From IMG/VR virus record IMGVR_UViG_3300009703_004110, positions 124,001-188,000 of that record: 64,000 nt of DNA. The stretch is one strand, 5' to 3'. The notes beneath the pieces were generated by a model that was not told the DNA's origin, did not search any database, and saw nothing but the letters and a program-made list of their open reading frames with translations. Position numbers and translations under genes: made by a program. This document shows positions 36,590-60,335 of the stretch, one piece after another; position 1 is the first letter of the stretch; the number at the start of each line of letters is the position of its first letter.

Positions 36590-39193
36590 TTATTTGTCTA
36601 GTATATTGTTTATAGTTGTATCTATTAATTCAGAAACTTCAAAAAATCCAGCTTTATCAGCTTGATTTGCAATTTTGGTCAAAGCCATAATCACTTCGAG
36701 ATTTGCGTGCTTTCCTCTAAAGTTTCCTGTAGGAGCGCTCTTAGCCACACCTTCAGAATGTGATTTCTGCTCTAATGAATTTTCAACAAGCCCGCCATTT
36801 CCCATTGCGTCTGCGACAACAATAGCTTCAGGGTGAGCCTCCTGAACCAAGTCAGCACCTTTCTCTCCATGTAATTCATAAAGGTCGCGGTAATCTGCCT
36901 TGGATTTGTCCGCTTTCGTATTGTACTGACTCTTAAGTCCAGCAAAATACGATTTGGCATATTGGTCTGAAAGACCAACGATAGCGTCACTTATATACTT
37001 ATTTGGATATTCGTTTGCCATCTTCACTCCAATGGTCGATCTATTAGTAGATCTCTTAATTAAGTCTGTGTATATTACTAGATTTTCAGCTCGTCTTGAA
37101 CGACCTCTTCTTCTATAATACTTAACAGCATTTTTCCATCCACTATGACGCCTTCTTCCCTGTTTTGGTATAGCGTGTCTCATGAATTTTCTCAATTGAG
37201 AAGGAGTGTGAACGCCTTCTTTATAGAGATACCCAAGCGAATTTAGATAGTCTACTTCCGGCCTACCAGTCTTTCTAATAAATCCGCCCCACTGATTATC
37301 TGGATCTACGAAAGCTTTGCCGACAGGATGGTTGAGTAATCTCTTGACCATTCTGAACGCTGTGCTTCTAAACCCTGCCGGGGTATCTGTTATATCTATT
37401 GGGACACCATAGACATCTAGAATTGTCCTTTCACCTTCTACGCCTTCGCCGATTCTTGGAGATGCAACAGGTTTAGTTCCTTGCTGTACACCGCCTTCTG
37501 TGCCTGCTCCTGCACCGACTCCCTGACCGCCACTAATACTTTCTCCGCCACCCGCATTGATAAGTGCTCGGAATTGCTCTTTTGCAGAACCAAGAGCTGC
37601 TAACAGTTCCTGATCCGCCGCAAGAGTATCCTCCCAGTGATTTGCTGCTGACAAATGTTCAGCAATATCATCACTACTTCTCATAAAATTAGTCGTCTCA
37701 GTTTTAAGTTCGCTAAGCTGTACCATTGCTTCGTCTTTCTCTTCGTCAGTTGACTCCGAAAGATTGTAAAGTACAGAGGCAGAACGCTGATTATCTCCAA
37801 GCTCATCAACCATATGCTGGTTGTGAGTTTCACCAGGACTAGCTGCAACAAACCTTAAAGCCTTATGCTTAGCCGTGGAAGCAATGATAGCCTTATGAAG
37901 ACGATTAATAGCCTCTTGATATGCGGCTAATTTATCGGCATCTCCCGAGATATAAGCCCAAATATTATCCCAGTTAAAATATACAGCAAGAAGAATAGCT
38001 CCAACTGCCGCATATGTTATTCCCTTAATTGCAAGGCCCGCAACAGTGCCCTCACCCATAAGCTTTTGGAGCCATTGAAGATTGCCACGCCTTATTGCCT
38101 GTAGCCAGGTTTCTGGTAAGTCGGAAGCCTTAACCGCTTTTTTTCCGGCCTTTCTTCCGGAATCTGCGAACTGCTTACATAGTTTTTTAATTGCCTCTTG
38201 ATTACCGGCAGATGTCTTTGCCACAGCCTCAATCTGTCCAACAAGCTCTTGCTTAAGCTCTCCCAAGCCAAAACGCATAGAGCCGGCAATCTCTTCGGCT
38301 GCCGCTATATTTCTTTCGGCTATGGCTCTAACCTCATCTGTCATAGTAGAGAGTGTGCCTTTTACTTCTCGTACTGAACCTTCTAGTACAACAACAGCTT
38401 CTTCTAGAACACCTAATTGCTGACTAGATGTATTTAAATCATCCGCCAGTTTGGTAACTTCTGGAGTTACTGCTCCACCAGAATTAACAATTGCAGTGGT
38501 TAAATCTTCAACCGCTGGAGCTTCTGCCTTTAATGTTGCATCAGCAGGGTTCGGCTTCGTAGGCGAAACCTCTGGAGCTTCAGGCTTTGCAGCTGGAGCC
38601 TCAGGCTTTACCGGAGGAACCTCCGGAGCATCAGGTTTTACTGTCGGAGCATCTGGTACCTTTACTGGCGGCACATCTGTCCTAGCTGCCGCAGTAGTTA
38701 ATTCTGCTATACGTGAGTCTAGTCCGGTCGTCACCCCTGGGATGCCATTATTTATACGGATTGCAAGATACTTTTCAACAGCAACTGCCGCTTCTGGAGT
38801 TGACTCTGCAAAGTCGATAGACTCTCGCGCCTTTTCTAGTAGCTGCTTAAACTTGCCTAACTCTTCGGATGATCTTTGCAAATAAGCTATATCGTCCCAG
38901 CCATCTCCGGCCGCCTCTTTAGTAGCCTTTGCTAAAATTCGAAACTGTTCATCTAAAGACTTTAAGTTAACTTTAAATAGATCTTCAAACATGCTATGAA
39001 ATTCAGCTGTATTTTTAAGAGTAACCTTTGTAGCTACGGTTGCAAACCCAAGAGCATCATCAATATATTTGGCAAAGTCGCCAAACGCACCAACAGCCAT
39101 ATCAGCCTTGCTGCCCTTCTTTTCGATAAAAGAATGCATTACAGACGAATATATGTCGAATACTTCAGATAAAGATACTGGTTGAATTTTCAT
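36590..39193 (-). CDS. Putative internal head/ejection protein (867 aa) with Pro-rich repeats and a TM-like segment
   Basis: KP(D/E)AP repeats, coiled coil, hydrophobic GITYAAVGAILLAVYFNW, C-terminal LTKIANQADKAG motif. Confidence 0.5.
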   Translation of the reverse strand: MKIQPVSLSEVFDIYSSVMHSFIEKKGSKADMAVGAFGDFAKYIDDALGFATVATKVTLKNTAEFHSMFEDLFKVNLKSLDEQFRILAKATKEAAGDGWDDIAYLQRSSEELGKFKQLLEKARESIDFAESTPEAAVAVEKYLAIRINNGIPGVTTGLDSRIAELTTAAARTDVPPVKVPDAPTVKPDAPEVPPVKPEAPAAKPEAPEVSPTKPNPADATLKAEAPAVEDLTTAIVNSGGAVTPEVTKLADDLNTSSQQLGVLEEAVVVLEGSVREVKGTLSTMTDEVRAIAERNIAAAEEIAGSMRFGLGELKQELVGQIEAVAKTSAGNQEAIKKLCKQFADSGRKAGKKAVKASDLPETWLQAIRRGNLQWLQKLMGEGTVAGLAIKGITYAAVGAILLAVYFNWDNIWAYISGDADKLAAYQEAINRLHKAIIASTAKHKALRFVAASPGETHNQHMVDELGDNQRSASVLYNLSESTDEEKDEAMVQLSELKTETTNFMRSSDDIAEHLSAANHWEDTLAADQELLAALGSAKEQFRALINAGGGESISGGQGVGAGAGTEGGVQQGTKPVASPRIGEGVEGERTILDVYGVPIDITDTPAGFRSTAFRMVKRLLNHPVGKAFVDPDNQWGGFIRKTGRPEVDYLNSLGYLYKEGVHTPSQLRKFMRHAIPKQGRRRHSGWKNAVKYYRRRGRSRRAENLVIYTDLIKRSTNRSTIGVKMANEYPNKYISDAIVGLSDQYAKSYFAGLKSQYNTKADKSKADYRDLYELHGEKGADLVQEAHPEAIVVADAMGNGGLVENSLEQKSHSEGVAKSAPTGNFRGKHANLEVIMALTKIANQADKAGFFEVSELIDTTINNILDK

Positions 39194-39194
39194 T

Positions 39195-41387: not shown

Positions 41388-41993
41388 TTAAGCCTTTTTA
41401 ATTTTCTCTATAGTCACCAAAACCATATCAGAAGCGATCTGGTTACCTGATTCAGTTAACTCTTTAGCCATTTTTTGAAGTTCAGAAACAACATGGAGTC
41501 GATCAGACGCTTCTTTAACGAAGTCATCTTTGATACTCATAGCTGTAGTTTCTACAATATCAGAAGCAAAGCCGTGCCCTTTCACTCTTAAGCTGCCAGC
41601 AATCTTACCAAGACCGTTCAGAATATGACCGGCCGTGGCATCGAAATAGTCAGACTCAGATAACTGAGCATCTTCTGCCATAGAAGGATCGCAAGCGCAA
41701 GATTCTTGAGCACACTTCTTACAGACAGCTAAAGCCTCCATCGAGTCAATGCTGCCATCAAGTGCCCCACTAATATCGTCCATTGATACTTCTGTAGACA
41801 TAAGAAAAGATTCAGCACTAGGCTCCACATCAGTGGCTTCTGCTTCTAGATCAGGATTTAAAACAGCTTCTACAGGATCATCAATCGGAGACTCAAAAAG
41901 TTCTTGAGACTCCTTGATAATCTTTGCTCGCTCCTCAAGAATTCTTTGATATTCTTGAGCAATACTATCACCATTAAATCTATTACCAAGCAT
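41388..41993 (-). CDS. Acidic head-cluster protein with two helical-hairpin motifs
   Basis: LGKIAGSLRVKGHGFASDIV and LQKMAKELTESGNQIASDMV. Confidence 0.6.
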   Translation of the reverse strand: MLGNRFNGDSIAQEYQRILEERAKIIKESQELFESPIDDPVEAVLNPDLEAEATDVEPSAESFLMSTEVSMDDISGALDGSIDSMEALAVCKKCAQESCACDPSMAEDAQLSESDYFDATAGHILNGLGKIAGSLRVKGHGFASDIVETTAMSIKDDFVKEASDRLHVVSELQKMAKELTESGNQIASDMVLVTIEKIKKA

Positions 41994-42010: not shown

Positions 42011-45000
42011 TTAGTTGAATAAGTCAGAAAGACTTTCGACCATAGTTTTTCTAGGAGTATCCTCTGGGGTTTCGTAACCAACGTTTAGCCCACCAAGATC
42101 ACTGGCTACCTTAACGGTGTCAGGGACTCTGGCGTTTGCTACTGAGCGCTTGAATGCTTCAAATGCCTTTTCGTCAAACTCTAGAACTAAATCTACTTGA
42201 CTATCAAGAGCTGCTCTGGTAGGAGGTATTAGTTGCTTGCGCTGCATATCCATCGCAAGGTCATAAGCCCTTCTCATCCTTAGCTTAATCTGCTCTCTTT
42301 CGTCTTCAGCTTTCTTCTCCATGAACTTCTGGCCAAGGGCCGCTCTTGGGGAAGGAACCTGTTCGGTTACAAAGGCAGCGTCTTGGACGCCATCGTTAGG
42401 AACGACATCATTCGCGTCGTTTGCGTCTGACTCCTCTCCTTCGTCTCCTTCGTGATGCTTATCTTCATGCTCATCAACTTCTTCTTCAGCTGCTTCCTCT
42501 GCCTTCTCTTCTACGTCTGCTTCGTCTACTGCATTATTTACAGCACCGTCATCAGCCGCTTGACCGGTAGGCTCTTTCTGAGCTACAACTTCTGCATCAT
42601 CAGCAGCGTTTAGTAGTCCATCATCAGCGCACTGTCCGGTAGGAGTCTTCTCTGCCACTTCTCTCGGAGTACCAGTTGGAGCCTTATCGCCAGGAACTGC
42701 CTGTACTTGTCCACCAGTTGGCGCTGCTTTCGCTACACCCTCTGCTGCACCTGCACCGTCATCAGCTGCATTGTCATCAACTTCGCTATCATCATCGCCT
42801 TCGCTAGCCTCACCGTCATCAGCGGCCATTTCTGCAGCAGCAGGAGCGGCTTCTTGAGCAAGCTTCTTACGAGCCTCCTCTACCATAGCTGCCCTTCGAG
42901 CCTTTCTCATCTCTAGTGCCTTGGCATATAGTTCTGAATCAGTTGCTTCAGTTGCGGATGCGGTGCTCTGTTCAGGAACTTCCTCTACATACTCAGAAGT
43001 CTTAACTAAAGACTTAGCCATTACGCTGGCCATTCTTAGTAAGGTACGTGCCTCACCAGATAGCTGGGCTGAATCACTTAGAGCGTCAGCAGCGAGACCC
43101 TTTAGTTCTGCCATTTTCTTAGCAGGAATCTTCTTTCTGTGCTCGAATGCTTCAGAGATCAAGGCTAGTTCATCAGCAGATTCACTAGACTCGGCCATAA
43201 CGACCTTCATATCTCTTAGAAGTCTCTTAGATAGAGCTACTTGTTCTGCATCGCCTTCACCAGGAGTAACGTTGATTTCTACATCACCGCCACCACCAAG
43301 TTCGTCTACGGCAGTTCTAAGTGCAGATACGGCTTCTTCCATATCTACTAGCGCACTGTCTACTCTTGACTTCGGATCGCCTTCTTCTTCTGCGAGTGGC
43401 TCTTCATCAAGTGGAGCCTCTTCGCCCAACGGAGCTTCCTCACCAAGTGGGGCCTCTTCGCCGAGAGCCTCTGGAGCTGCTACATCGCCAAGATCGCCAA
43501 GCGGAGATTCTTGAGCTACGCGAGTTAGCTTAGCAGCAATTGCCGGCAAACCTTCTTCACGAATAGCTGCGACAACAGCCTTACCGTATTCACGGCTGCT
43601 TAGGAATTCCCAATTTTCTTCTAGCTTAGGACCATAGATGTCCTTAGCAGTTGTTGCCAAGACGAGGTGGCCATCAGCATATACTTCGAAGCAAGAAGCC
43701 GCTTTATTAACGGCACCGTTAAGGGCCCTAACCTGCTTGAACTTAGTGCTTAGCTTAGCTCTCTTTTGCTGTTCTTTTATCTGCATATCGCCAGGGAAAG
43801 TTCCAGTGTCTCCACCCATTGACTTATCCTGGTGCATGTGCTTATCGTCCATCCAGTACTTCTTGTAGTCTTCAGACTTAAAAGTAGATGGCTCAACAGG
43901 CTCAGCGGAACCTTCGCCTGCCGCACCACCGTAGAAGTAGGCTCTCCTCTCCATACGACGTTGTGCAAGCTCAGCTCTCTTTTGCTGCTCTTTTACCTGC
44001 ATATCTCCTGGGAAGGTACCAGAGTCTCCACCCATTGACTTGTCCTGATGCATGTGCTTGTCATCCATCCAGTATTTCTTGTAATCTTCTGAGGTAAAAG
44101 TACTTGGCTCGACAGGCTCAGCGGAACCTTCTCCTGATGCACCACCGTAGAAGTAAGCAATACGACGTCTCAATTCCGCACGCTTTCTTAGATTTGATTC
44201 ACTCATTATTTCTCCCATAATGTTTTTAATTGATTTGTCTCTATCTAGACTGGAAAAAGCATAAGATTCTGGTCCTACACCATCCGTATCGAACGTATCA
44301 GTAAGTTCACCACTGTCACTAGAAACTAATCCTGTGGACTCGCCTCCAGTTCCTCTAACACCTTCACTATCATATGTTTCAAGAGAAGGTGCTCCTTCAG
44401 CAGATTGACCGCTTGTAAATACCTCTCCTTCAGCTGTACTCATTTCATTCTCATACGCTTTACCAAAACTAGTATATAGCGTTTGAATATCTCTATCTGT
44501 TGCGCCGGCGTCCCTTAGCTGGGACAGAGCCTTTGCAAACTGAACCTCTTTAGCTGCTTCCGGACTAAGGGCTGCATCTTGAGCGTTCTTTATAAATCCC
44601 TTCTTTTCTAGATAGCCGCCAATTAATGACGCCCTCTTATCGATCGTGCAACCTTGCGGCCCACATGCGACCTTTAATAGCTGGTCCAACTCTTCAGCAT
44701 TCTTTAACGTTAGATTCGATACGAACTCGTTATAATCAGAAATGCCGTGGCTGACCAGTTCCGCCTTGTGATCGCCAATAGACGCCAAGCACTGAAGTAA
44801 TCTAGCCCCAGGTTCTGCAGGCTGAACTACGAGGCTATACTCAATTGGCTGTAAGCCAATGTTGATTTCGCCATATGCAGAACGTGCTGTTACACACTTG
44901 CAATACTGAGTTGGAGTGCTGGCTCTGTTTCCGCAGTCACTACAAATAGAAGTAGAAACCGCAGTTCCCATAGAACCATATCGAACAACCCCCGTCTCAA

Positions 45001-45508
45001 CCTTTCTAGCTAAGTTAGGGTAATTTACTTTATCTAATGCGCAAAGACCTACCGCCTGCTTGTGCTTCTCATCGTAATAAACGTCAAGAATAATACCCCT
45101 GATTCCGTCAACAGATTCAGATTTGTGGTCTACACAAAGTGGCATTCCAATCCAATCTCGGGCGGCCTTCTTTAGTTCTGATTCCGGGAAGATGTCGCCA
45201 TTGTTATTCTTGTGAGGTTGAACATTACCGTGCCACTTAAATTGGTCATCAAAATAACCCCAAGCACGGTCACTGCCAACCTTCCTCAAATTACCTTCGT
45301 CATCAACCAGGGAAGCTTCAGCTGCTCTTAAAAATATGATTGTAAAATATAAAAAATCGTCTGATTTAGGAGCCAGAACTTGTGAGGTTCTAGCAAACTT
45401 TCCAAGCCTTTTCAAAATAACAGGAGACGCGGTAACCGTATCAGCATCGACTTCTTGCACCACATTGCTATTGGAATATCCAAATTTTTTAATATCTAGT
45501 CCAGGCAT
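42011..45508 (-). CDS. Prohead protease-scaffold fusion (1165 aa)
   Basis: N-terminal NNNGDIFPESELKKA..WIGMPLCVDH...SMGT...CSDCG...IEYSLVVQPAEP is an HK97/herpes-type protease pattern. The C-terminus is acidic and coiled-coil. Confidence 0.8.
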   Translation of the reverse strand: MPGLDIKKFGYSNSNVVQEVDADTVTASPVILKRLGKFARTSQVLAPKSDDFLYFTIIFLRAAEASLVDDEGNLRKVGSDRAWGYFDDQFKWHGNVQPHKNNNGDIFPESELKKAARDWIGMPLCVDHKSESVDGIRGIILDVYYDEKHKQAVGLCALDKVNYPNLARKVETGVVRYGSMGTAVSTSICSDCGNRASTPTQYCKCVTARSAYGEINIGLQPIEYSLVVQPAEPGARLLQCLASIGDHKAELVSHGISDYNEFVSNLTLKNAEELDQLLKVACGPQGCTIDKRASLIGGYLEKKGFIKNAQDAALSPEAAKEVQFAKALSQLRDAGATDRDIQTLYTSFGKAYENEMSTAEGEVFTSGQSAEGAPSLETYDSEGVRGTGGESTGLVSSDSGELTDTFDTDGVGPESYAFSSLDRDKSIKNIMGEIMSESNLRKRAELRRRIAYFYGGASGEGSAEPVEPSTFTSEDYKKYWMDDKHMHQDKSMGGDSGTFPGDMQVKEQQKRAELAQRRMERRAYFYGGAAGEGSAEPVEPSTFKSEDYKKYWMDDKHMHQDKSMGGDTGTFPGDMQIKEQQKRAKLSTKFKQVRALNGAVNKAASCFEVYADGHLVLATTAKDIYGPKLEENWEFLSSREYGKAVVAAIREEGLPAIAAKLTRVAQESPLGDLGDVAAPEALGEEAPLGEEAPLGEEAPLDEEPLAEEEGDPKSRVDSALVDMEEAVSALRTAVDELGGGGDVEINVTPGEGDAEQVALSKRLLRDMKVVMAESSESADELALISEAFEHRKKIPAKKMAELKGLAADALSDSAQLSGEARTLLRMASVMAKSLVKTSEYVEEVPEQSTASATEATDSELYAKALEMRKARRAAMVEEARKKLAQEAAPAAAEMAADDGEASEGDDDSEVDDNAADDGAGAAEGVAKAAPTGGQVQAVPGDKAPTGTPREVAEKTPTGQCADDGLLNAADDAEVVAQKEPTGQAADDGAVNNAVDEADVEEKAEEAAEEEVDEHEDKHHEGDEGEESDANDANDVVPNDGVQDAAFVTEQVPSPRAALGQKFMEKKAEDEREQIKLRMRRAYDLAMDMQRKQLIPPTRAALDSQVDLVLEFDEKAFEAFKRSVANARVPDTVKVASDLGGLNVGYETPEDTPRKTMVESLSDLFN
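43757..44158 (-). repeat. Two near-identical 186-bp (62-aa) repeats within the scaffold, period 216 bp
   Basis: AYFYGGA.GEGSAEPVEPSTF.SEDYKKYWMDDKHMHQDKSMGGD.GTFPGDMQ.KEQQKRA at 43973-44158 and 43757-43942. Confidence 0.95.
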
Positions 45509-45570: not shown

Positions 45571-47388
45571 TTATTCAGATAGAACAATCATACCCAAAAT
45601 GTTAGAATTAATGTATTCTTTTGCTCTTTCTAGAGAGGAAACAAGGTCCTCTACCGCGCTCTCATAACCGTCTGTTAGTCCCGAAAACTCTATAAAAAAG
45701 TCCGGAGATTTAATTTTATCTATCATAGCGAAAACTTTTTCCGCAGCATCTGATGATGCCTTAGATGATGATACCAGGCTATCAATAATTTCCAAGGTAG
45801 TTGTTATATCCCTTATATCATTCAATATTCTAATAGAGTCCCTTACCTTAATCAGATATGACTTAATCAAAGCAGTATTTCTTTTAACAGACTGATGAAA
45901 CTGGCCTTTGGAATTAGATATTACCTCATCATTTCCTTGATGCTTTTCGTATTCAATTTTGTTTTTAAGCATCTTCTCAAGAGATTCTTCAGCAATAGTC
46001 TGTGCACGTTGCAAAGCCTTTATAGCTTCCTTGCCCTTTCTCTTTACGTCGTCTGGAACAGGAATACCGGCGTTTCTAAGAAGGGAGCTGTCCGCCTTAA
46101 TAGTGATTTTAGCATTAGGATATTTATCTTTGATACAAGTCAATATATTTATCGCATCCATGTCTGAAGATAAAGATAATATTTCTACTGTATCTAAATC
46201 TATCAGCTCTCCATGCTGGTAAGTCATTTTATGCTTTAGCATATCTACCAGATTTCTAGGCGCAGATGCGGATGTACAGAATATTATTTTCTCTTTAGAG
46301 TCATAAGCTGTTTTTATAGAACTAAGAAGCTTGCCGACTTCGTTGTTATACGGCATGTCTCCATCTATATGTAGAAATTCAGCAAAGCTGCCCCTAACTA
46401 ATCTTCCAATAGAATGTTCTTTTCTCGCGTCTACAGATAGACTCTTTGTTACAAATACAGATAACCCATTGATATCAGTCGTCATAAATCCTTGCCAGCT
46501 ATCATCAACATCAATGCTTCTAGTATAGTTTTTTACTTGCGCCGCTTGTGCGAATAAGCCATCCATATAGAACGCAGTAACGCTCTCAATAGGCTGAGGC
46601 GCAAGGTTAATTAAATCGGAAGTAAGGCCTAGACTCTTTCTAGATGCCTTCTTGGATAAAGTTGGAGATATATTAACAACAGGAAAGTTATTCCATTTAT
46701 ATGCCCCATTCTTCTGGAAATCAAAATGAGTTAATATCGCACTCTTAGAAAAGCCGGCCTCTGAAGATGTCTTATTGATATCCTTTATTAAGTGAGAACG
46801 TCTTCCTATCTCAATCATATCACCAACATCGATTCCAAGTCGACTTGTTAACCCGCCATATATTTCTAAGACATATTTTATATCTGAGCATCCGAATGTC
46901 GCTAAAGATCCTGGCTCGATGTTGCGATAGATTCTTCTTATAACGTTATCCTCGTTTACAAAAAGTATATCAATCGGAAAAGATACAGATCCCATGTGAT
47001 ATAGTACATCCTCCGGCCTTCTATATTTAAAGAGAAGGCCGGCATCTTCACCTAAAGATTTATAAGATTGAAGCCCAATGACTTTATCTTGGTAACTTTC
47101 GGCCACACCACATAAAAATACTGCTAATGGAGAATTTGCCCCATTATAAACTGTAATCTGAGCTTTCTTTTTAGTATCTTGATCATCAACCCAACTATAG
47201 TCATTACACTCGACGGGGCTTATAATGCCGCCCTCATAGCCCATAATCTCCTGATCTTCTAAAACGGACTTTTCTGGAACTAGTCCATCATACGGTTCTG
47301 AGGTATCTTGCTCAATTGACATAGGGCCACCTTCTGGTGTAGTATCTTTGATAGAACCTGGTGCTCCAAGCAATGCAGTTTTCTTCAT
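45571..47388 (-). CDS. DUF192-domain fusion protein (605 aa)
   Basis: VAESYQDKVIGLQ...GLLFKY...YHMGSVSFPIDILFV...KYVLEIYGG...GIDVGDMI, followed by C-terminal helical domains. Confidence 0.7.
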   Translation of the reverse strand: MKKTALLGAPGSIKDTTPEGGPMSIEQDTSEPYDGLVPEKSVLEDQEIMGYEGGIISPVECNDYSWVDDQDTKKKAQITVYNGANSPLAVFLCGVAESYQDKVIGLQSYKSLGEDAGLLFKYRRPEDVLYHMGSVSFPIDILFVNEDNVIRRIYRNIEPGSLATFGCSDIKYVLEIYGGLTSRLGIDVGDMIEIGRRSHLIKDINKTSSEAGFSKSAILTHFDFQKNGAYKWNNFPVVNISPTLSKKASRKSLGLTSDLINLAPQPIESVTAFYMDGLFAQAAQVKNYTRSIDVDDSWQGFMTTDINGLSVFVTKSLSVDARKEHSIGRLVRGSFAEFLHIDGDMPYNNEVGKLLSSIKTAYDSKEKIIFCTSASAPRNLVDMLKHKMTYQHGELIDLDTVEILSLSSDMDAINILTCIKDKYPNAKITIKADSSLLRNAGIPVPDDVKRKGKEAIKALQRAQTIAEESLEKMLKNKIEYEKHQGNDEVISNSKGQFHQSVKRNTALIKSYLIKVRDSIRILNDIRDITTTLEIIDSLVSSSKASSDAAEKVFAMIDKIKSPDFFIEFSGLTDGYESAVEDLVSSLERAKEYINSNILGMIVLSE

Positions 47389-50292: not shown

Positions 50293-52080
50293 TTATCTAA
50301 GTCTTGGTAGATGAGCAAGGGATGGCAATGGCATCGTTGTTTCTTTGTCAACTCCAGGCCTAATAGTGAAACCCTTAGTCATATCATACTTCCAAGCTAT
50401 ATACGCATACATTAAAGCCATAAGGCCGTCATTAGGTATACTACCTTTTTTATATATTTTAATTGGCTGCCCAGAGGATATTCTTGTTCCCTGTTCCATT
50501 GAGGTACAGTGATCAATTAACCACTCCAGATGCTCATAGCTCTGCCAAGGGAATCTAATTTTGCCTTTTTTAAACTTCTCAAATATTTCATCAATAAGAA
50601 GGTCTTTGTGATAACCAACCATTAGTTCATCCTCACGATACTTTAAAGGCTTAGCTAAGTTACCACTTCCTTGGGCCCCAAGAAATCTATCTCCATATAT
50701 CATTTGTAGATCTGTAACTACGTCCTGACCATAGAAATGATCGGATACACCTCTTTGGATTCCAAACCTTCTATAGCATTCTTTAATGGTTGCTATCTTA
50801 TGCTTGAATCTATGCTCGCCAATTTTATGAGCATGCTCTACCAGAAGGGTGCCATCTGCTTGTGCCGACAATACCACTACGCAAGAGAAAGATTGCCCTC
50901 GGTCTATATTGTCATTCTCTACTTTACCACCCCAGTCTACACCAAGATATGTTCTCTTATGATGCGGATCAATTTTTCTCGCCATAGACCTGTCCTGATC
51001 TCGACACATCTCATATATATCGGCCTTGGTCAACGGAAGACCTGCACCAGAATAGAATTCTCCAATAACCTCATTGTTCCACACTCGGTTGGACTGGGTC
51101 GGATTATTCTCAGGCATCAAGTCTAGAATGTTTTGTTTTGGAAAATTAGGAAGATAGAGCTGATTAATATGATAGCCAACATACTTGGCTGTAGCAGGGT
51201 CTCTAGTAGGAACCCACTTTCCAAGCTCAATTGACTCAATCTTATGCTGCTTATGTCCGCATAGTGGGCACTGAATAGTGAAGCCCTCTACCCAAATAGT
51301 CTTCCATCGATCATCACCAGATAGATAGAATGGAAAATGATCTTTACAGTTGCCGCATCCAAGGTGATAATATCTCTGATCTGATTGTTCCCAGATGGAA
51401 TGAAAGTAAGAGCTTCTTTCTTTTGGAGTTCCGAAGTAAACTTGAACGCCCTTACCTACGGCGCCGTATTTTGCAGCGGTTAATATCTTGGTGGCATTAC
51501 CAATTGCCGCACCATACATGTCCTGAACCTCATCAAAGAAGGTTACATCTGCAGTCATACCTCTGATTCTATCCGCATCTCTACCGAGACTATCTACCCA
51601 TAAGGTTCCAGAGGTAAATTGCTTCATCGTCAGATTATCTACGGCATTAATATCTTTGAGCTTATTCTTGTTAATGATATCATTCTTAGCCGTTCTAATC
51701 ATTCCCTCTAGTTTATCTTGAGTGAACTTCTTTACCATAGCTAAAGCAGGAAAAGCATGCAATACTCTAATTGGAGGATTAGAAAAAAGGCCGCTATTAG
51801 TCAGATATAGATCTAGGGCGCCAGCCATCATGGTTGCACCAACCTGACGACCCTTACATAATACAACAGGCTTCCCTATTTCGGTGGTAGCCTGCATAGC
51901 AATATAACGATAAATGTCGGCCATGAATTTCCATCCATTGCCGACAATCCTAAACGGTTGTCCGTCAATCGTTAAATTATTTTCAACAAAGTGAGCCGGA
52001 TCATAATCTAAAAAACTAGATTTGATCTGAGTAAACAGCTCATCATTACTTTTAATTAAATCTTTCTTATACTTTGACAC
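50293..52080 (-). CDS. terL: Terminase large subunit (lambda GpA-like)
   Basis: Walker A-like KGRQVGATM, Walker B FFDEVQ, FGTP coupling motif, CxxC...CxxC, nuclease YLGVDWG. Confidence 0.9.
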   Translation of the reverse strand: MSKYKKDLIKSNDELFTQIKSSFLDYDPAHFVENNLTIDGQPFRIVGNGWKFMADIYRYIAMQATTEIGKPVVLCKGRQVGATMMAGALDLYLTNSGLFSNPPIRVLHAFPALAMVKKFTQDKLEGMIRTAKNDIINKNKLKDINAVDNLTMKQFTSGTLWVDSLGRDADRIRGMTADVTFFDEVQDMYGAAIGNATKILTAAKYGAVGKGVQVYFGTPKERSSYFHSIWEQSDQRYYHLGCGNCKDHFPFYLSGDDRWKTIWVEGFTIQCPLCGHKQHKIESIELGKWVPTRDPATAKYVGYHINQLYLPNFPKQNILDLMPENNPTQSNRVWNNEVIGEFYSGAGLPLTKADIYEMCRDQDRSMARKIDPHHKRTYLGVDWGGKVENDNIDRGQSFSCVVVLSAQADGTLLVEHAHKIGEHRFKHKIATIKECYRRFGIQRGVSDHFYGQDVVTDLQMIYGDRFLGAQGSGNLAKPLKYREDELMVGYHKDLLIDEIFEKFKKGKIRFPWQSYEHLEWLIDHCTSMEQGTRISSGQPIKIYKKGSIPNDGLMALMYAYIAWKYDMTKGFTIRPGVDKETTMPLPSLAHLPRLR

Positions 52081-52091: not shown

Positions 52092-52694
52092 TTACACTGT
52101 TGGTTCAGCGTGCTGGTAATACTCTGCTCTATTGTCTTCTGCATCACCAGATGCTATCGGCTCTGGCGGAACGTATTTTACATCATACTCTTCATCATCA
52201 GATACAAGAGTTCCGATCCACTCCTGTAATTTCTTAAGATTGATTGGAAGATCGACGAAGCGTAAGCCAGGTTCTTTTCTGCATCTATCAAGTACAGTAG
52301 GGACATCAAGATGAGGCTCATGATCTGAAAGGTCTTTAATGTAACTTAATATTTGGCTCATAGCTTTGATATCAGACTCGCTATGCTCAGCCTTTGCAGT
52401 CTTAATTTTACATACGCATGAAGCTACCTTTTCACATCCGCAGTTTTGGGAAGCTACCTTAGGCTCTTCGTTACGATATTCTGCTAACAGATCAAATCCT
52501 ATTCGACTTTTAATATCTGCCATTTTAGCATCTATCGTTCTAAATCGCCTAGCGTTATCTAATATACGAGTCCTATCACCTCCGTCTAGATATTCTAAAT
52601 TTGCTTCTTTAGCTATGCTATTTGCAAATTCATCCAACCAGTCGCAAGTTATATTATAGTTCTCTGTTAAATCAGATTGCCTGTTAATCTTCAT
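52092..52694 (-). CDS. Hypothetical head-cluster protein
   Basis: 200 aa with repeated KEA/KVA/KTA sites. Confidence 0.6.
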   Translation of the reverse strand: MKINRQSDLTENYNITCDWLDEFANSIAKEANLEYLDGGDRTRILDNARRFRTIDAKMADIKSRIGFDLLAEYRNEEPKVASQNCGCEKVASCVCKIKTAKAEHSESDIKAMSQILSYIKDLSDHEPHLDVPTVLDRCRKEPGLRFVDLPINLKKLQEWIGTLVSDDEEYDVKYVPPEPIASGDAEDNRAEYYQHAEPTV

Positions 52695-52704
52695 TTGTAA
52701 TCCT

Positions 52705-53760
52705 TTATCCGAAGTAATTCTTAATAAAGTCTATACCGTGACCCTCAGTTTCTTTACCACTTTGTGGAGTTGCACCAATAGTTCCACGATCCTTAAAGAT
52801 CGGAAATCCGTAATCCATCACTAACTGAAGAACAGCAAGCTCTTCACGGTCGGTTAGTTTGTACTTGTCCTTTAGAAAGTCATAAACATCTTCAAATGGG
52901 TGTCCACCAGAAACTACAGAGTTGACAAGAATGCCAGAAATAGCTCTTTCGAATGGGGTCATAACCATTTGTACACGAGAGACGGTTGCTTCCTTTTGCA
53001 TAGGCTCATTATCAGATACTCCAGCAAGAATGATGACCTCTTCGAGATCAACCGAACTGTTGGACTTTAACTTCTTCTTAAGCTTGCCCATGTGCTCTTT
53101 TAATGCACTCATATCGTGAATCATGTTAACTCTTGCCTTCTCGATAAAATCCATATCAAGAACGTGACTTACGTCCTTTCTAACAGCCTCTGAAACTTCA
53201 TTATTCAGTCTGTTCAAATAAGAGTAGGCCCTTTCACATCCGGAAATAGAGCGGCCATCGTGACGAGGAATGCCGCCAGGGTAGCCTTCCTGTAGATAAT
53301 TTGTAAAGTGTGAAACATCTCTGTCGTCAACCCATGAGGTCTGCTTTGGCTCTTCTGGCTCAGGTTCAGGATCTTCGACATAAGCAACATCAGATCCTGG
53401 AAGATATAGGCCATCACGGTTCTCATCGGACTGCTCTTCTGGATGGTCCCCTTCTTCAAATCCCATTAGCCCATGCAATAGACCTTCTGAAACTTCTTCA
53501 TCTGAAGGCTCTGAACCTTCCTCAAATGTAACTTCTTCGAACGGTATAATATCAGCCTCTTCTATAGGTAGTTCTTCCTCTTCCTCAAAGGTAACAACTA
53601 ATGGCTCGATCTCCTCTATGTCAAGCTCAGGCATATCAGAGCCTTCCTCGACCTCAAGAAGCTCATGTAGATCAGGTTCGTCAGCTAAACTTTCAGCCAC
53701 GGGAGGATGAGCAATCTCCTCTTCTCTTGCGCCTGGATATACATAGCTTATTTTTTTCAT
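52705..53760 (-). CDS. Acidic head-cluster protein
   Basis: Start refined to MKKIS at 53760 (AAGGAG RBS). Glu-rich N-half; C-half contains IPRHDG..ISGCERA. Confidence 0.6.
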   Translation of the reverse strand: MKKISYVYPGAREEEIAHPPVAESLADEPDLHELLEVEEGSDMPELDIEEIEPLVVTFEEEEELPIEEADIIPFEEVTFEEGSEPSDEEVSEGLLHGLMGFEEGDHPEEQSDENRDGLYLPGSDVAYVEDPEPEPEEPKQTSWVDDRDVSHFTNYLQEGYPGGIPRHDGRSISGCERAYSYLNRLNNEVSEAVRKDVSHVLDMDFIEKARVNMIHDMSALKEHMGKLKKKLKSNSSVDLEEVIILAGVSDNEPMQKEATVSRVQMVMTPFERAISGILVNSVVSGGHPFEDVYDFLKDKYKLTDREELAVLQLVMDYGFPIFKDRGTIGATPQSGKETEGHGIDFIKNYFG

Positions 53761-53770
53761 TACGTTCTCC

Positions 53771-54049
53771 TTAACCAAAAAAACTCATAAGGCCGTGCCA
53801 CGTATTAGTGATATTATCATCACCAACCGCTCCAGAATCCGGATACGGACCAGTAGAGAGTGGCTTAGCCGATTCACCCGTCCATATCCTTGGGGATAGG
53901 GGGCTACCATTTAAAGGAATATTAACAGAAAATTCTTCAGACAGCAGAGGGGCATCAGGATCAGCTTCAGCACTCTCTTCTTCAGAGCCTTCAAGTTCAT
54001 CATTCATTTCTTTATTTAAGAAATCAAAAAAATCTTTGGGGCTTGACAT
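53771..54049 (-). CDS. Hypothetical protein
   Basis: 92 aa with an AGGAG RBS. Confidence 0.55.
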   Translation of the reverse strand: MSSPKDFFDFLNKEMNDELEGSEEESAEADPDAPLLSEEFSVNIPLNGSPLSPRIWTGESAKPLSTGPYPDSGAVGDDNITNTWHGLMSFFG

Positions 54050-54084: not shown

Positions 54085-55041
54085 TTATCCAGTGACTTTG
54101 ACATGAAAATGATCATCTTCTTCGAGCTTAGACATTTGAAATTCACCACTTTGTTCTACCTCAGATAATAGCTCTTTTGTTTCGCCATCTTGAAGTCTTA
54201 AATCTATAGCATTACCAGAACCATGACCAGTATGAGCTAGGCCTAGAGATTCATAATATTCTGCGCCAGCTTTTACACCATTTCGGCTAGTTCCAAGATC
54301 TAAAAAAATATCATTCATGCCTATGACCATATTTTTATTTTGATAAAGATCATAGAGATATATAAGGCCGGCATTAAGAGGCTTATTAGTTACGCTTCTT
54401 AGTCTATCAACAGTCGCCTGGCCATGAAAACGGGCATACTTATGCGCATCACTATCTGATACAATCCTGGAACCGTCTCCTCCCTGTCTTTGCCAATTTT
54501 TAGCCATAGCACGAATTTGTGCTCGTGGAGATCTAAACCCACTGGTAACGTGCGGTTTGTGATATCCTTTTTCCTTCGCCAAATTGCCAAGAGCTGCGAG
54601 AAATTCTTTCATGGTATCTGAAACACCATCTAGATTTACACCTGTATTTGATTTTACAACTCCTTTATAGTCGCGTGAACCGCCTCTAAGTTTGCCGCTT
54701 AAACCCCCTCTGTCAAAAAGACCGGCTGCCCAGTCTCGTACTCTTCTGGTTCGCTCTTGTATGCCGTCTGATAATCCGGCAGCTTCTCCAGCAACTGTTC
54801 CGTCCGACTCCGCTTGAAGTATTTCTAAAACATCAGCTGGCCCACGATGGACCCTTCCCCACTTATCGCTATACTTATTCCAATACCACAATGTCCAAGA
54901 ATTATAGTCAGAAGTATAAGACCCAGGCAAACTAGTTGCGTGATTCCTCCACCATAGCTCCAACTCTTTATAGTCAGGCCCTTGGCTAGAATACTCTTCC
55001 CAGTTGTAAGCAGTGAATGCTGTTTTTCTAATTTTATGCAT
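54085..55041 (-). CDS. M15-family Zn peptidase (peptidoglycan hydrolase)
   Basis: VTSGFRSPRAQ, GHGSGNAIDL, EDDHFHV. Confidence 0.75.
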   Translation of the reverse strand: MHKIRKTAFTAYNWEEYSSQGPDYKELELWWRNHATSLPGSYTSDYNSWTLWYWNKYSDKWGRVHRGPADVLEILQAESDGTVAGEAAGLSDGIQERTRRVRDWAAGLFDRGGLSGKLRGGSRDYKGVVKSNTGVNLDGVSDTMKEFLAALGNLAKEKGYHKPHVTSGFRSPRAQIRAMAKNWQRQGGDGSRIVSDSDAHKYARFHGQATVDRLRSVTNKPLNAGLIYLYDLYQNKNMVIGMNDIFLDLGTSRNGVKAGAEYYESLGLAHTGHGSGNAIDLRLQDGETKELLSEVEQSGEFQMSKLEEDDHFHVKVTG

Positions 55042-55789: not shown

Positions 55790-55799
55790 GACTCAATCC

Positions 55800-58198: not shown

Positions 58199-58213
58199 GC
58201 CATCTCCTTAAAT

Positions 58214-58255: not shown

Positions 58256-58273
58256 ATAGTTTTGGAACTAGGT

Positions 58274-58744: not shown

Positions 58745-58754
58745 AGACCGCTCC

Positions 58755-60335
58755 TTAGGAGAATACTATTCTAGAGGTGGAGATTAACGTTTCCTCATCA
58801 ATATTAGCACTCTTGTTTCTGTACTTAGGATAAGGACGACCCTGCTCATCAAAGTCAACTTTACTTAGTGGCAATCCTAGCTTAGGACAGTATGGCTCTA
58901 CTGATGTGGAAATGGTGATTAGATCACCGCGTTCGAAGGCCTCCTTAACTACCTGAGCCCTAGAAGAGCCTTGTCTAGCAGATACCTTTAGAAGTTCAGC
59001 AAACTTATCAAGCGCAATCTTGTGTTGTACTGCGCCAAATTTTTCTTGGATAGTTGCCAAAGAATCTTCGGCAAGCTTATAATCTTGTGATGATACACCA
59101 TCAATCATTCTATCTACAAGCTGATAGTAAGTCATGCTACTCATTTCGCCATTCTGCCTAGCCTTTCGTATGCCGGAGTCATCACGAGATGTGTTAGTCA
59201 CAAATGCTTTAATGTCATTATATGTAAAGTCGTGTATAACCTCTTCGGTCGAAGAAGAGGACGCAAACCTGCTTGGAAGAATTGGCTTATCGTTATGGAA
59301 TTCTACGGGAACGTGAATCATGCTCCTGCCCATTGCGGTAGGAATAGATACATCGAACATCAGAGTGTTTTGATCCGAAGAAGCAACTCTAATCTGCGGG
59401 TTAACCACGCCAGCAGCCTTGAACTCTGTTGCCAACATGCTGCTCGCCATTAATACCTGCTCTCTGCTGAAGTTAGATGCCGCAACTACTAGCTCATTCT
59501 CTAGTTCTGCATAATCCTTTAGGGCGTTTGGAACAACCGCCTTATCAACAGATATAGCCTGAGAACCATGCTGCCCGGCGAACTTATTCAAACTAGCAGT
59601 CTTGACCTGATTTTCTTCCATCTTTAGATGCACTAATAGATTAGCGCGACTTAGCTCAGTCACTTCCCCACCAGAGATCATTGTCTTAGGTGGGGAAACC
59701 TGGCCACCAGTTATAGGAACCGGTATGTGTACCGCAACCTTGTTAAGGCTGTTAGTATTGTATACTGCGGTAGCCAAAACAAAGTGATTGTTTGATTCTG
59801 AAATCACAACGTCATTTGGCTGCATACCCATATGGCTTAGCTTGGAAATAACGGCTTTCTGTACTTCTCTTTTATCTTTCGGATTATATAAGCCAAAAGA
59901 ATTTTCATTACCAAGATCAAAAATAGAGGCAAACGCATTGGAAAGCCCCTCGTCATGATCCACCTGAATAGACTTGGATTCATCTGAGCCTCTTCTCGTG
60001 GAAGCAGAATAGGCCGTCTTCTGAAGTTGTCTATTTTGTAATAGTAAGTCACCAAGTTCTGCGCGGAAAGCGGTCTGTCCGCCAGATAGTCCGTACATTC
60101 TATCATAACAGTCGGTCAGTTCTTGCTGAGAAAAGAATTCCTGTCGGCTTGCACGTTTTACTACAACATCACGCATATTTCCGATTAACTGATCAGTTGG
60201 ATGATTAGACGCTGCGGTTACAAACCTGCTGACAATATATGGCGCAGAATACTTGCTTCCATCTTCCATCTGCCCCAAAGCGGCTCTAGCTTCTTTTAGG
60301 AGCTGCTTAATGTCTGTTGCTTTTAAATCTTTCAT
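58755..60335 (-). CDS. Hypothetical protein with an internal domain duplication (526 aa)
   Basis: KVAVHIPVPITGGQVSPP and RSMIHVPVEFHNDKPILP segments; several K-x-A sites. Confidence 0.6.
   Translation of the reverse strand: MKDLKATDIKQLLKEARAALGQMEDGSKYSAPYIVSRFVTAASNHPTDQLIGNMRDVVVKRASRQEFFSQQELTDCYDRMYGLSGGQTAFRAELGDLLLQNRQLQKTAYSASTRRGSDESKSIQVDHDEGLSNAFASIFDLGNENSFGLYNPKDKREVQKAVISKLSHMGMQPNDVVISESNNHFVLATAVYNTNSLNKVAVHIPVPITGGQVSPPKTMISGGEVTELSRANLLVHLKMEENQVKTASLNKFAGQHGSQAISVDKAVVPNALKDYAELENELVVAASNFSREQVLMASSMLATEFKAAGVVNPQIRVASSDQNTLMFDVSIPTAMGRSMIHVPVEFHNDKPILPSRFASSSSTEEVIHDFTYNDIKAFVTNTSRDDSGIRKARQNGEMSSMTYYQLVDRMIDGVSSQDYKLAEDSLATIQEKFGAVQHKIALDKFAELLKVSARQGSSRAQVVKEAFERGDLITISTSVEPYCPKLGLPLSKVDFDEQGRPYPKYRNKSANIDEETLISTSRIVFS

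What the first reader, a model, noticed from the sequence alone, without database searches (positions are those of the whole stretch)
36590..60335. Recurrent (hydrophobic)-x-K/R-x-A/S motif across head-cluster proteins: candidate prohead-protease cleavage code
Seen: several proteins begin MKKES, MKKES, MKKTA, MKKIS or MHKIRKTA. Internal sites include FIKNAQ, LTRVAQ, LVKTSE and TVKVAS (scaffold); IIKESQ and FVKEAS (201 aa); SLKTAN, LIKNAD, LTKKAY and LMKAAQ (493 aa); LQKTAY and QVKTAS (526 aa); MQKEAT; IAKEAN and KVAS twice; and FRKSAS (portal). They often sit at domain boundaries. Established: T4 gp21 and phiKZ gp175 cleave many head proteins at short motifs ending in Glu. Inference: this phage processes its head contents after K-x-A/S, a different specificity, which would mark the DUF192 fusion and the M15 peptidase as packaged cargo.
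Basis: partly seen in the sequence, partly recalled or inferred. Interest (0 to 1): 0.65.

Follow-up and report, generated by a model that had tools for sequence, protein, structure and literature searches.

The report
Candidate cleavage motif in phage head proteins
In this 332-kb jumbo phage and its uncultured relatives, a short motif (hydrophobic-x-Lys/Arg-x-Ala/Ser, core L-x-K-x-A) is over-represented and conserved in head-assembly proteins only, and it is most likely the site where the phage's head-maturation protease cuts them, although no cut has been shown.

Summary
All the listed strings are present.

**Enrichment**
- Phi-x-[KR]-x-[AS] occurs 51 times against 26.6 expected (z 4.9) in the genes from major capsid protein to portal.
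- It is at expectation in the tail genes (42 vs 41.8) and in the large terminase.
The acidic (Phi-x-[DE]-x-[AS]) and reversed versions are not enriched.
- The head module is also the only significant 10-kb bin in a related complete 335-kb genome.

**Conservation**
- Across 11 syntenic head modules the ratio is 2.0, the top of 241 motifs.
- There are 34 conserved motif columns in head proteins, many flanked by insertions or deletions.

**Where the sites lie**
- They lie on both sides of the protease domain of a 1165-aa protease-scaffold protein.
- One sits in a capsid-protein N-terminal extension that phage G lacks.
- They mark the N-termini of three small head proteins.
- In the DUF192 protein the three conserved sites fall in low-confidence stretches of the AlphaFold model, two of them short inter-domain linkers.

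**Limits**
- Cleavage is inferred, not shown.
- The cut could follow K/R, as in HK97 and T4, or follow A/S.
- The M15-like gene is not supported as packaged cargo.

I rate this a new variant of a known kind.

The parts
42011..45508 (-). 1165-aa prohead protease plus scaffold-like polyprotein. It holds 15 motif matches against 6.6 expected.
   Evidence: PHROG 18299 'head maturation protease', E 2.7e-11 at residues 113-209. tblastn matches phage G gp19 and annotated head maturation proteases. Motif count. 116 homologs give 1865 matches against 783 expected.
44774..45391 (-). Protease domain, residues about 40-245. H128 and S179 (in G-S-M-G) are invariant, and a Cys cluster follows.
   Evidence: Alignment A1 of 37 sequences. 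The AF2 model has pLDDT 65. The best fold matches are T4 gp21 (5jbl; Foldseek ranks 1-3 at E 0.04; VIA Z 5.0 over 117 residues) and VZV assemblin (Z 4.0). S179 aligns to HK97 gp4 Ser114 in a non-significant hhalign.
45392..45406 (-). Site LGKFA, residues 35-39, directly N-terminal of the protease domain. Candidate autoprocessing site.
   Evidence: Motif present in 11/11 orthologs and 116/116 homologs. Phage G gp19 has LVKTA and VVKIA at the aligned place.
44582..44680 (-). Sites LLKVA (277-281), IDKRA (289-293) and FIKNA (305-309) at the C-terminal edge of the protease domain.
   Evidence: Conserved in 8/11, 4/11 and 7/11 orthologs. FIKNA becomes LVKTA in L004 with every free position changed.
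42995..44191 (-). Scaffold-part sites: LRKRA 440, MERRA 519, VNKAA 600, LTRVA 661, LLRMA 823, LVKTS 834. They would cut the tail into pieces of about 10 to 160 aa, plus a C-terminal piece of about 330 aa.
   Evidence: Each is conserved in 8-10 of 11 orthologs. Residues 661 and 834 are followed directly by indel-rich columns.
34867..35880 (-). Major capsid protein, 337 aa.
   Evidence: PHROG 2522, E 2.2e-73. It is 50% identical to phage G gp27 from residue 44 onward.
35809..35823 (-). Site IVRYA, MCP residues 20-24, in an N-terminal extension of about 40 aa. Candidate propeptide cut.
   Evidence: The pattern I-[VI]-[KR]-[YF]-A is present in 11/11 orthologs with K/R exchange. Phage G gp27 lacks this extension.
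45571..47388 (-). 605-aa DUF192 fusion protein. Conserved sites: MKKTA at 1-5 (window 47374-47388), LSKKA at 244-248 (46645-46659), LLRNA at 436-440 (46069-46083).
   Evidence: Pfam DUF192, E 1.9e-20. The fold matches 3pjy and 3m7a. The sites are kept in 10/11, 8/11 and 11/11 orthologs. The AF2 stretches with pLDDT below 50 are 1-63, 244-253 and 437-442, which cover exactly these sites.
47397..47684 (-). 95-aa head-module protein. N-terminal site MKKES (47670-47684).
   Evidence: Kept in 9/9 orthologs. In three orthologs the motif is preserved although 2-4 residues precede it.
47681..48217 (-). 178-aa head-module protein. Sites MKKES at 1-5 (48203-48217) and LVKYA at 100-104 (47906-47920).
   Evidence: Kept in 7/8 and 8/8 orthologs.
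48214..48459 (-). 81-aa protein. Site LKKIA at 19-23 (48391-48405).
   Evidence: Kept in 6/6 orthologs.
48490..50280 (-). Portal protein, 596 aa. Sites in the N-terminal variable region: LDKLS 24-28 (50197-50211) and FRKSA 64-68 (50077-50091).
   Evidence: PHROG 16240, E 3.5e-48. FRKSA scores 6/10 by column, but 9/10 orthologs carry a motif within the indel there by inspection.
41388..41993 (-). 201-aa protein, the most motif-dense. Sites IIKES 25, LGKIA 128, FVKEA 158, LQKMA 172.
   Evidence: Orthologs give 48 matches against 13.0 expected, ratio 3.7. Sites kept in 6-10 of 10.
36590..39193 (-). 867-aa head-module protein of unknown role. Site LTKIA at 838-842 (36668-36682).
   Evidence: Kept in 9/11 orthologs. 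The ortholog set has ratio 1.54.
52092..53778 (-). 200-aa and 357-aa genes upstream of TerL. Sites IAKEA 27-31 (52602-52616) and MQKEA 260-264 (52987-53001).
   Evidence: Kept in 10/10 and 9/10 orthologs. The second lies in an indel-rich linker.
58755..60335 (-). 526-aa protein of unknown function, 10 matches against 3.5 expected. Conserved sites: VVKRA 58-62 (60150-60164), LLKVS 448-452 (58980-58994), VVKEA 462-466 (58938-58952).
   Evidence: 73 homologs give 729 matches against 248 expected, ratio 2.94. Sites kept in 64, 67 and 64 of 73. No family or fold lead was found.
50293..52080 (-). Large terminase. Internal negative control, since it is not a prohead component.
   Evidence: PHROG 675, E 1.2e-66. 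Motif 3 vs 2.8 in the window, and ratio 1.08 across 9 orthologs.
54085..55041 (-). 318-aa M15/VanY-like protein. Not supported as a substrate.
   Evidence: Pfam hits are only E 0.07-0.1. Motif ratio 0.93. 0/2 matches are kept in G001. It is fused to PolyA_pol in L007-L009.

Best explanation
The window holds the head-assembly module of a 332-kb jumbo phage related to Bacillus phage G. Its prohead protease is the N-terminal domain of a 1165-aa protease-scaffold polyprotein.

The motif [LMFIV]-x-[K>R]-x-[A>S] is most likely the recognition and cleavage site of that protease. After prohead assembly the enzyme would:
- free itself at sites on both sides of its domain;
- chop the acidic scaffold tail and the 201-aa and 526-aa proteins into small pieces;
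- trim N-terminal peptides from the capsid protein (about 22-24 aa), the portal and three small head proteins;
- separate the domains of the DUF192 protein.

Shown here: the enrichment, its restriction to head proteins, its conservation, and its placement in linkers and at N-termini.

Inferred: that the motif is cut, and by this protease.

Undetermined: the scissile bond. My rough odds are 50% for a cut after K/R (P3 hydrophobic, P1 basic, as in HK97 F-N-K|S and T4 L/I-x-E|), 35% for a cut after A/S, and 15% for something else.
For: 1. **Head-specific enrichment.** MCP to portal z 4.9, tail z 0.0, TerL none. The head module is the most enriched stretch of the whole genome. In relative G001 it is the only 10-kb bin with p<0.01 (40 vs 19.2, p 2e-5).
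2. **Unbiased ranking.** First of 235 motifs in the region, while the rest of the genome gives z 0.2. First of 241 motifs across 11 genomes, both in observed/expected ratio (2.0; motif distribution mean 1.0, sd 0.27) and in conserved columns (34).
3. **Selection on the motif itself.** 33 of 45 sites are kept at 40-90% protein identity. Several are kept with every free position changed: FIKNA to LVKTA, IIKES to LEKKA, LSKKA to LIKTA. K and R exchange within the same column. There is no information outside the three fixed positions, so the sites are not copies of one longer repeat.
4. **Placement.** Sites lie on both sides of the protease domain, and phage G gp19 has matches in the corresponding N- and C-terminal flanks (7 vs 2.0). 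One site is in the MCP N-terminal extension that phage G lacks. Sites mark the N-termini of three consecutive head genes. The three conserved sites of the DUF192 protein fall in AF2 low-confidence stretches 1-63, 244-253 and 437-442. About half of the conserved sites are islands next to indels.
5. **Precedent.** Prohead proteases of T4, phiKZ and SPN3US cut many head proteins at one short motif, and SPN3US gp245 also cuts its own C-terminus (PMC5694885). The HK97 scaffold domain ends in F-N-K at residue 103 (PMC10275583).
Against: - There are no protein-level data of any kind.
- The motif carries little information. About 27 of the 51 head-module matches are expected by chance.
- Conserved matches inside well-conserved folded segments may be structural rather than cleavage sites. 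Examples are protease K61 and K114, MCP K53 and K84, portal K123 and TerL K129.
- Homolog counts are not independent, because the sequences share ancestry.
- More distant phages with a homologous protease show no significant enrichment. Mycobacteriophage Alice gp90 has 9 vs 5.6, and phiRSL1 has no excess. The specificity, if real, is therefore clade-specific.
- The protease assignment rests on a PHROG hit, tblastn matches and weak fold matches. No Pfam S77 or S78 hit was found, and the model is poor around H128 and S179.
- N-terminal M-K-K may partly reflect a general preference for Lys codons after the start codon.
- Removing a peptide of 3-5 residues has no obvious purpose.
Confidence: 0.62

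Rival explanations
1. The motif is a docking or capsid-targeting peptide. It would bind the scaffold, the protease or the inner capsid surface to recruit proteins into the prohead, and would not itself be cut.
For: The motif is at the extreme N-terminus of three head proteins, where cutting would remove only 3-5 residues. T4 internal proteins use an N-terminal capsid-targeting sequence (own knowledge; mentioned in PMC5694885). Everything measured here (enrichment, conservation, linker position) fits binding as well as cutting.
Against: In T4 the targeting peptide ends in the protease site, so the two readings are not exclusive. Ten or more sites spread along a scaffold tail, and sites on both sides of the protease domain, fit fragmentation better than docking.
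Confidence: 0.17
2. The excess is a by-product of composition or secondary structure, for example Lys/Ala/Leu-rich amphipathic helices in scaffold-like proteins, or of shared ancestry among the homologs.
For: Phi at position i and Ala at i+4 lie on one face of a helix. The scaffold-like proteins are helical and rich in K, A, E and L. Phi-x-[KR]-x-Phi is enriched everywhere in the genome.
Against: Phi-x-[DE]-x-[AS] (z 0.9), Phi-x-[QN]-x-[AS] (z 0.2) and the reversed motif (z -0.2) are not enriched. Local shuffles keep the excess. The rest of the genome gives z 0.2. The conserved sites sit in low-pLDDT linkers and next to indels rather than in helices. The motif is kept while all free positions change.
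Confidence: 0.07
3. The motif is cut, but by a different enzyme: a host protease or another phage protease.
For: Staphylococcal phage 80alpha uses a host protease for capsid and scaffold trimming (PMC5744158 title and abstract). Phage G encodes ClpP and ClpX, which were found in particles (PMC12484599).
Against: The motif brackets the prohead protease domain in all 116 homologs and in phage G gp19, which points to self-processing. The relatives come from very different habitats, and presumably hosts, yet keep the same motif.
Confidence: 0.07
4. The Lys is a site of covalent chemistry, such as an isopeptide cross-link or acylation, rather than of recognition.
For: HK97-type capsids cross-link through a lysine (own knowledge).
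Against: Arg replaces Lys in the same alignment columns (MCP site, scaffold sites 661 and 823), and 21% of all sites have R. Most sites are in proteins or segments expected to leave the head.
Confidence: 0.03

Closest known systems
T4 gp21 prohead protease and its L/I-x-E cleavage motif (with the capsid-targeting peptides of the internal proteins)
   Same: One protease inside the prohead and one short motif repeated over many head proteins. N-terminal peptides are removed, the scaffold core is fragmented and the enzyme processes itself. Position P3 is hydrophobic. T4 gp21 is the best fold match of the protease domain here.
   Different: The specificity residue is basic (K/R) instead of Glu, and a third fixed position (A/S) lies two residues further on. 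Here the protease is fused to about 900 aa of scaffold-like sequence. There is no sequence-level match to Pfam S77.
phiKZ gp175 and SPN3US gp245 (S/A/G-x-E or A-x-E motif) in giant phages
   Same: A giant-phage head with many processed proteins, in which the motif can be read from sequence and predicts propeptides (PMC5694885, PMC10052503).
   Different: A different motif, a different phage lineage (a phage G-like MCP of 337 aa, not the phiKZ type), and a prediction only, with no mass spectrometry.
HK97 gp4 protease cutting gp5 after Lys103 (F-N-K|S)
   Same: Phi-x-K directly before the maturation cut. The catalytic order is His then Ser. S179 in G-S-M-G aligns with gp4 Ser114 in G-M-S-V-G, without statistical significance.
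   Different: In HK97 the small residue follows K directly. HK97 has one fused scaffold domain on the MCP, whereas here the scaffold is fused to the protease and the motif is spread over ten or more proteins.
Herpesvirus assemblin (V/L-x-A|S maturation and release sites) - own knowledge
   Same: Assemblin-type fold (VZV protease, Z 4.0). The protease is fused to the scaffold in one polyprotein and is released by cuts on both sides. A small residue (Ala) sits at the cut if the bond here follows A/S.
   Different: Assemblin has P3 hydrophobic and no basic residue requirement. It has only two sites per polyprotein.
Bacillus phage G gp19, and the protease-fusion proteins of mycobacteriophage cluster C (Alice gp90, 1511 aa)
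   Same: Homologous protease domain (34-35% identity). Phage G shows the same motif around gp19 and an excess in its head region (66 vs 41.2; 13 proteins with an N-terminal match vs 4.3 expected). Alice gp90 has the same fusion architecture.
   Different: In phage G the protease is a separate 300-aa protein and its MCP lacks the N-terminal extension. Alice and phiRSL1 show no significant enrichment of the motif.

Membership tests
Prohead (capsid maturation) serine protease of the assemblin / T4 gp21 / HK97 gp4 fold | Sequence match to a curated protease family | tested here: inconclusive
   PHROG 18299 'head maturation protease', E 2.7e-11, and tblastn to annotated head maturation proteases of BcepSaruman and phiRSL1. 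There is no Pfam S77/S78 hit at E<=0.01 and no PDB sequence hit.
Prohead (capsid maturation) serine protease of the assemblin / T4 gp21 / HK97 gp4 fold | Assemblin-type fold | tested here: inconclusive
   The AF2 model has pLDDT 65. T4 gp21 takes Foldseek ranks 1-3 but only at E 0.04. VIA gives Z 5.0 (117 aa) for gp21 and Z 4.0 for VZV protease, within the noise range stated by the tool.
Prohead (capsid maturation) serine protease of the assemblin / T4 gp21 / HK97 gp4 fold | Conserved His followed by the Ser nucleophile | tested here: met
   H128 and S179 (G-S-M-G) are invariant in 37 sequences. They are also present in phage G gp19 and Alice gp90. Catalysis itself was not tested.
Prohead (capsid maturation) serine protease of the assemblin / T4 gp21 / HK97 gp4 fold | Gene placed between portal and major capsid protein in the head module | tested here: met
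   The order TerL, portal, three small genes, DUF192 protein, protease-scaffold, further genes, MCP holds in the window and in the 9 relatives whose locus spans it; L005 lacks a full-length TerL at that position.
Motif-directed head processing system (T4 / phiKZ / SPN3US type) | One short motif recurring in many head proteins and not in tail, packaging-enzyme or replication proteins | tested here: met
Motif-directed head processing system (T4 / phiKZ / SPN3US type) | Motif positions conserved among relatives, near N-termini or between domains | tested here: met
   34 conserved columns in head proteins, plus the linker and N-terminal positions.
Motif-directed head processing system (T4 / phiKZ / SPN3US type) | Motif flanks the protease itself (self-processing) | tested here: met
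   Sites at residues 35-39 (116/116 homologs) and 277-309. Phage G gp19 has matches at 41, 48, 246 and 272. Only placement is shown, not cutting.
Motif-directed head processing system (T4 / phiKZ / SPN3US type) | Mature protein ends map to the motif (mass spectrometry or Edman) | not testable with these tools
   No proteomic data are available. The supplements of the phage G paper are not held.
Motif-directed head processing system (T4 / phiKZ / SPN3US type) | Cut follows Glu | tested here: not met
   Phi-x-[DE]-x-[AS] is not enriched (z 0.9). The fixed charged position is K (79%) or R (21%). Hence this is a variant, not a member of the Glu-specific group.

The most novel reading that the evidence does not exclude
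A whole clade of uncultured phages (contigs of 135-420 kb from lakes, oceans and other habitats), together with cultured Bacillus phage G, may use a basic-residue cleavage code, L-x-K-x-A, for head maturation. This differs from the Glu-directed code of T4 and the phiKZ group. If so, the set of processed and packaged head proteins could be read from sequence alone, including the DUF192 fusion, the 526-aa protein and a protease-scaffold polyprotein that dismantles itself.
Probability: 0.5. Interest if true: 0.62.

Novelty: new variant of a known kind. Interest (0 to 1): 0.55.

Why it matters
- Prohead-protease specificities are known for only a handful of phages. For T4, phiKZ and SPN3US, all of which cut after Glu, the motif predicts which proteins are processed.
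- A sequence-readable code for the phage G-like giant phages, almost all of them uncultured, would allow three things from metagenomes alone. Internal head and ejection proteins could be annotated, mature capsid and portal termini could be predicted for structural work, and propeptides could be recognised.
- The work gives a concrete, cheap experiment in a cultured phage (phage G).
- It carries a practical warning. If the cut follows K/R, ordinary trypsin-based proteomics cannot see it.

Tried and rejected
- **DNA similarity.** megablast of the region against the phage collection found nothing.
- **PDB by sequence.** Searches with the protease domain as a single sequence and as a profile gave nothing usable.
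- **HK97 gp4.** hhalign against HK97 gp4 was not significant, probability 0.3.
- **Fold searches.** The matches to T4 gp21 and assemblin are weak because the AF2 model is poor (pLDDT 65). I treat them as leads only.
- **526-aa protein.** The ESM Atlas search gave no lead.
- **bS21.** No ribosomal protein S21 gene is present, so the genome is not one of the bS21-encoding phages of PMC9723584, although that paper notes a fused prohead core scaffolding and protease gene in them.
- **Literature.** Searches for a described K-x-A-type prohead motif, and for N-terminal sequencing of Bxz1 or phiRSL1 capsids, found nothing relevant. The Gonzalez et al. 2020 phage G structure paper is not held, and the 2025 phage G paper has no held supplements.
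- **DNA-level cause.** Rejected, because codon usage at motif positions equals the background.
- **Lysine modification.** Rejected on the K/R exchange.
- **Distant relatives.** Extension of the code to mycobacteriophage Alice and phiRSL1 was tested and found no significant enrichment.
- **Not used.** The large representative-protein search and the read-mapping tools were not needed.

Full report
**What the window is**

The window is bases 124001-188000 of a single 332,270-bp virus contig, estimated 99% complete. Nearly all genes are on the minus strand.

Read in the direction of transcription, the genes run as follows.
- A replication block: UvsX-like recombinase and primase.
- Several unknown genes, including the 526-aa and 493-aa proteins.
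- A CCA-adding-type nucleotidyltransferase and a weak M15/VanY-like protein.
- 92-, 357- and 200-aa genes.
- Large terminase (50293-52080) and portal (48490-50280).
- 81-, 178- and 95-aa genes.
- A 605-aa DUF192 fusion.
- A 1165-aa protein whose residues about 45-245 match head maturation proteases.
- 201- and 231-aa genes, a GIY-YIG homing endonuclease, and 125-, 867- and 220-aa genes.
- The major capsid protein (34867-35880).
- Small genes, then the tail, with the sheath at 9856-13077.

The nearest cultured relative is Bacillus phage G. Its MCP is 50% identical and its protease domain 34% identical.

**The observation**

Split by function, the excess belongs to head genes.

| Group | Observed | Expected | z |
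|---|---|---|---|
| MCP to portal | 51 | 26.6 | 4.9 |
| 493-aa to 526-aa block | 17 | 8.8 | 2.9 |
| Tail and neck | 42 | 41.8 | 0.0 |
| Large terminase | 3 | 2.8 | 0.1 |
| M15-like and CCA genes | 2 | 3.4 | -0.8 |

The acidic version (z 0.9), the amide version (z 0.2) and the reversed motif (z -0.2) are flat. Shuffling within 20-residue blocks keeps the excess in the three densest proteins. Codon usage at the motif positions equals the background, so this is a protein-level signal.

**Replication in relatives**

The 1165-aa protein has a large family of homologs of about 1100 aa on metagenomic contigs of up to 420 kb. In 116 of them the motif occurs 1865 times against 783 expected, with fixed positions along the alignment.

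I fetched ten syntenic head modules and aligned each gene.
- Across the 11 genomes the head proteins give 627 matches against 313 expected.
- That is the highest ratio of 241 motifs (distribution mean 1.0, sd 0.27).
- It is also the most conserved columns for its expected count (34).
- The terminase gives a ratio of 1.08.

In the complete 335-kb genome of one relative, a scan with the pre-defined motif flags a single 10-kb bin at p<0.01, and that bin is the head module (40 vs 19.2, p 2e-5). The 526-aa protein family gives a ratio of 2.94 over 73 homologs.

Residue by residue, the motif narrows to [LMFI]-x-K-x-A. Ala is 2.9-fold and Ser 1.5-fold over expectation, and Lys 2.7-fold and Arg 1.3-fold. 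There is no information outside these three positions.

**Why this looks like a functional short motif**

Sites persist while everything around them, and the free positions inside them, change. Examples are FIKNA to LVKTA, IIKES to LEKKA and LSKKA to LIKTA. K and R alternate in the same column. About half of the conserved sites are islands next to indels.

The sites are placed as follows.
- One lies directly before the protease domain (residues 35-39, 116/116 homologs).
- Three lie just after the protease domain (residues 277-309).
- Six lie along the acidic, repeat-bearing tail.
- One lies at residues 20-24 of the MCP, inside an N-terminal extension that phage G gp27 lacks.
- Two lie in the variable N-terminal region of the portal.
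- One lies at the very N-terminus of each of three consecutive head proteins. In some orthologs of the 95-aa protein the motif is kept although extra residues precede it, which argues against a mere M-K-K start preference.

In the AlphaFold model of the DUF192 protein, the stretches with pLDDT below 50 include 1-63, 244-253 and 437-442. The three conserved sites are at 1-5, 244-248 and 436-440.

Twelve of 24 proteins in window 34867-60335 have a match in their first 30 residues, against 63 of 359 elsewhere in the genome.

**Interpretation**

In T4, phiKZ and SPN3US, one short motif recurs across many head proteins and marks where the prohead protease cuts. It removes N-terminal propeptides, and SPN3US gp245 also cuts its own C-terminus (PMC5694885, PMC10052503).

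All characterised proteases of this fold that I could check put a hydrophobic or small residue at P3 and the defining residue at P1.
- T4 cuts at L/I-x-E|.
- SPN3US cuts at A-x-E|.
- The 103-residue HK97 scaffold domain ends in F-N-K.

Read the same way, the motif here would be Phi(P3)-x-K/R(P1)|x-A/S(P2'). A cut after A/S, with Ala at P1 as in herpesvirus assemblin (own knowledge), remains possible. The conserved block runs from Phi to one residue past A/S, which fits either register.

**The protease itself**

- H128 and S179 are invariant.
- The domain model is poor, at pLDDT 65.
- Its best structural matches are T4 gp21 and, lower down, VZV assemblin, at scores the tools themselves call inconclusive.
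- No Pfam protease family is hit.

I therefore file it as a prohead protease on the PHROG and tblastn evidence, the gene position and the His/Ser pair. The fold remains unconfirmed.

**Reach of the code**

Phage G shows the same pattern.
- gp19 has 7 matches against 2.0 expected, placed before and after its catalytic domain.
- gp6-gp57 together have 66 matches against 41.2 expected.
- 13 proteins have an N-terminal match against 4.3 expected. That last figure may be inflated by Lys-rich N-termini.

Mycobacteriophage Alice, which has a similar protease fusion (gp90, 1511 aa), and phiRSL1 show no significant enrichment. The specificity is therefore clade-level, not family-wide.

**Claims about cargo**

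The DUF192 fusion is a conserved head-module gene with three conserved linker or N-terminal sites, which is consistent with a processed internal head protein. Its DUF192 domain matches structures of unknown function.

The M15-like protein is not supported as cargo.
- Its Pfam matches are weak.
- It shows no enrichment.
- Both of its matches are lost in G001.
- It is fused to the nucleotidyltransferase in relatives.

The 493-aa protein is weakly supported: 5 matches against 2.7 expected, with 3 of 5 kept.

**Novelty**

I found no description of this motif. The concept is well known, but the specificity, the clade and the fused protease-scaffold substrate map are new predictions. I rate it a new variant of a known kind.

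Noticed in passing
window 39798-40556 (-): A free-standing GIY-YIG/NUMOD3 homing endonuclease sits between the 231-aa and 125-aa head genes. The same spot is empty in 8 of 10 relatives. It is occupied in L007, and L012 holds a 51-aa remnant.
   Followed up: partly
L004 3094-6954 and 211-3084; L011 2041-4887; proteins P0054, P0094: Intein-sized insertions in relatives. The portal is 1286 aa against 596 aa, with two inserts. TerL is 957 or 948 aa against 595 aa, and one copy has Intein_splicing and LAGLIDADG Pfam hits. Two protease-scaffold homologs also carry intein domains. The window's own copies are intein-free.
   Followed up: partly
window 43752-44155 and 43400-43459: There is a 216-nt (72-aa) tandem duplication, 87% matching, inside the scaffold part of the 1165-aa gene. 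Each copy begins just after a motif site. An 18-nt repeat encodes E-E-A-P-L-G units.
   Followed up: partly
window 44900-44950 approx. (residues 187-205 of the 1165-aa protein): An invariant cysteine cluster (C189, C192, C203, and C205 in the window's copy) lies just after the putative nucleophile S179. It looks like a zinc-ribbon insert in the protease, and a similar cysteine cluster follows the nucleophile Ser in phage G gp19 and mycobacteriophage Alice gp90.
   Followed up: no
window 54085-55789 (-): The M15/VanY-like 318-aa gene and the PolyA_pol (CCA-adding type) 251-aa gene overlap by 8 bases. In relatives L007-L009 they correspond to one fused ORF of 463-581 aa as I called the frames (548-703 aa in the contigs' own gene calls).
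   Followed up: no
window 33839-34708 (-): A 289-aa HNH / endonuclease VII-like protein with a Lar-like N-terminal part lies directly downstream of the MCP. It is another likely mobile nuclease in the head module.
   Followed up: no
All four sites are kept in G001 with changed free positions.
   Followed up: partly
L016 8839-13374 (Mycobacterium phage Alice gp90): Cluster C mycobacteriophages encode a 1511-aa 'hypothetical protein' that is a prohead protease domain fused to a long tail. This is the same architecture as here, but without the L-x-K-x-A excess.
   Followed up: partly
whole contig G000: IMG/VR labels the 332-kb contig 'provirus', although it is 99% complete, almost entirely one-stranded and phage-like throughout. 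The relative G001 has direct terminal repeats.
   Followed up: no
genome C1 0-20 kb and 220-250 kb (outside the window): There are mild motif excesses (ratios 1.3-1.6, p 0.02-0.1) in two other genome stretches. They might hold further head or internal proteins, but none is significant after correction for multiple testing.
   Followed up: no
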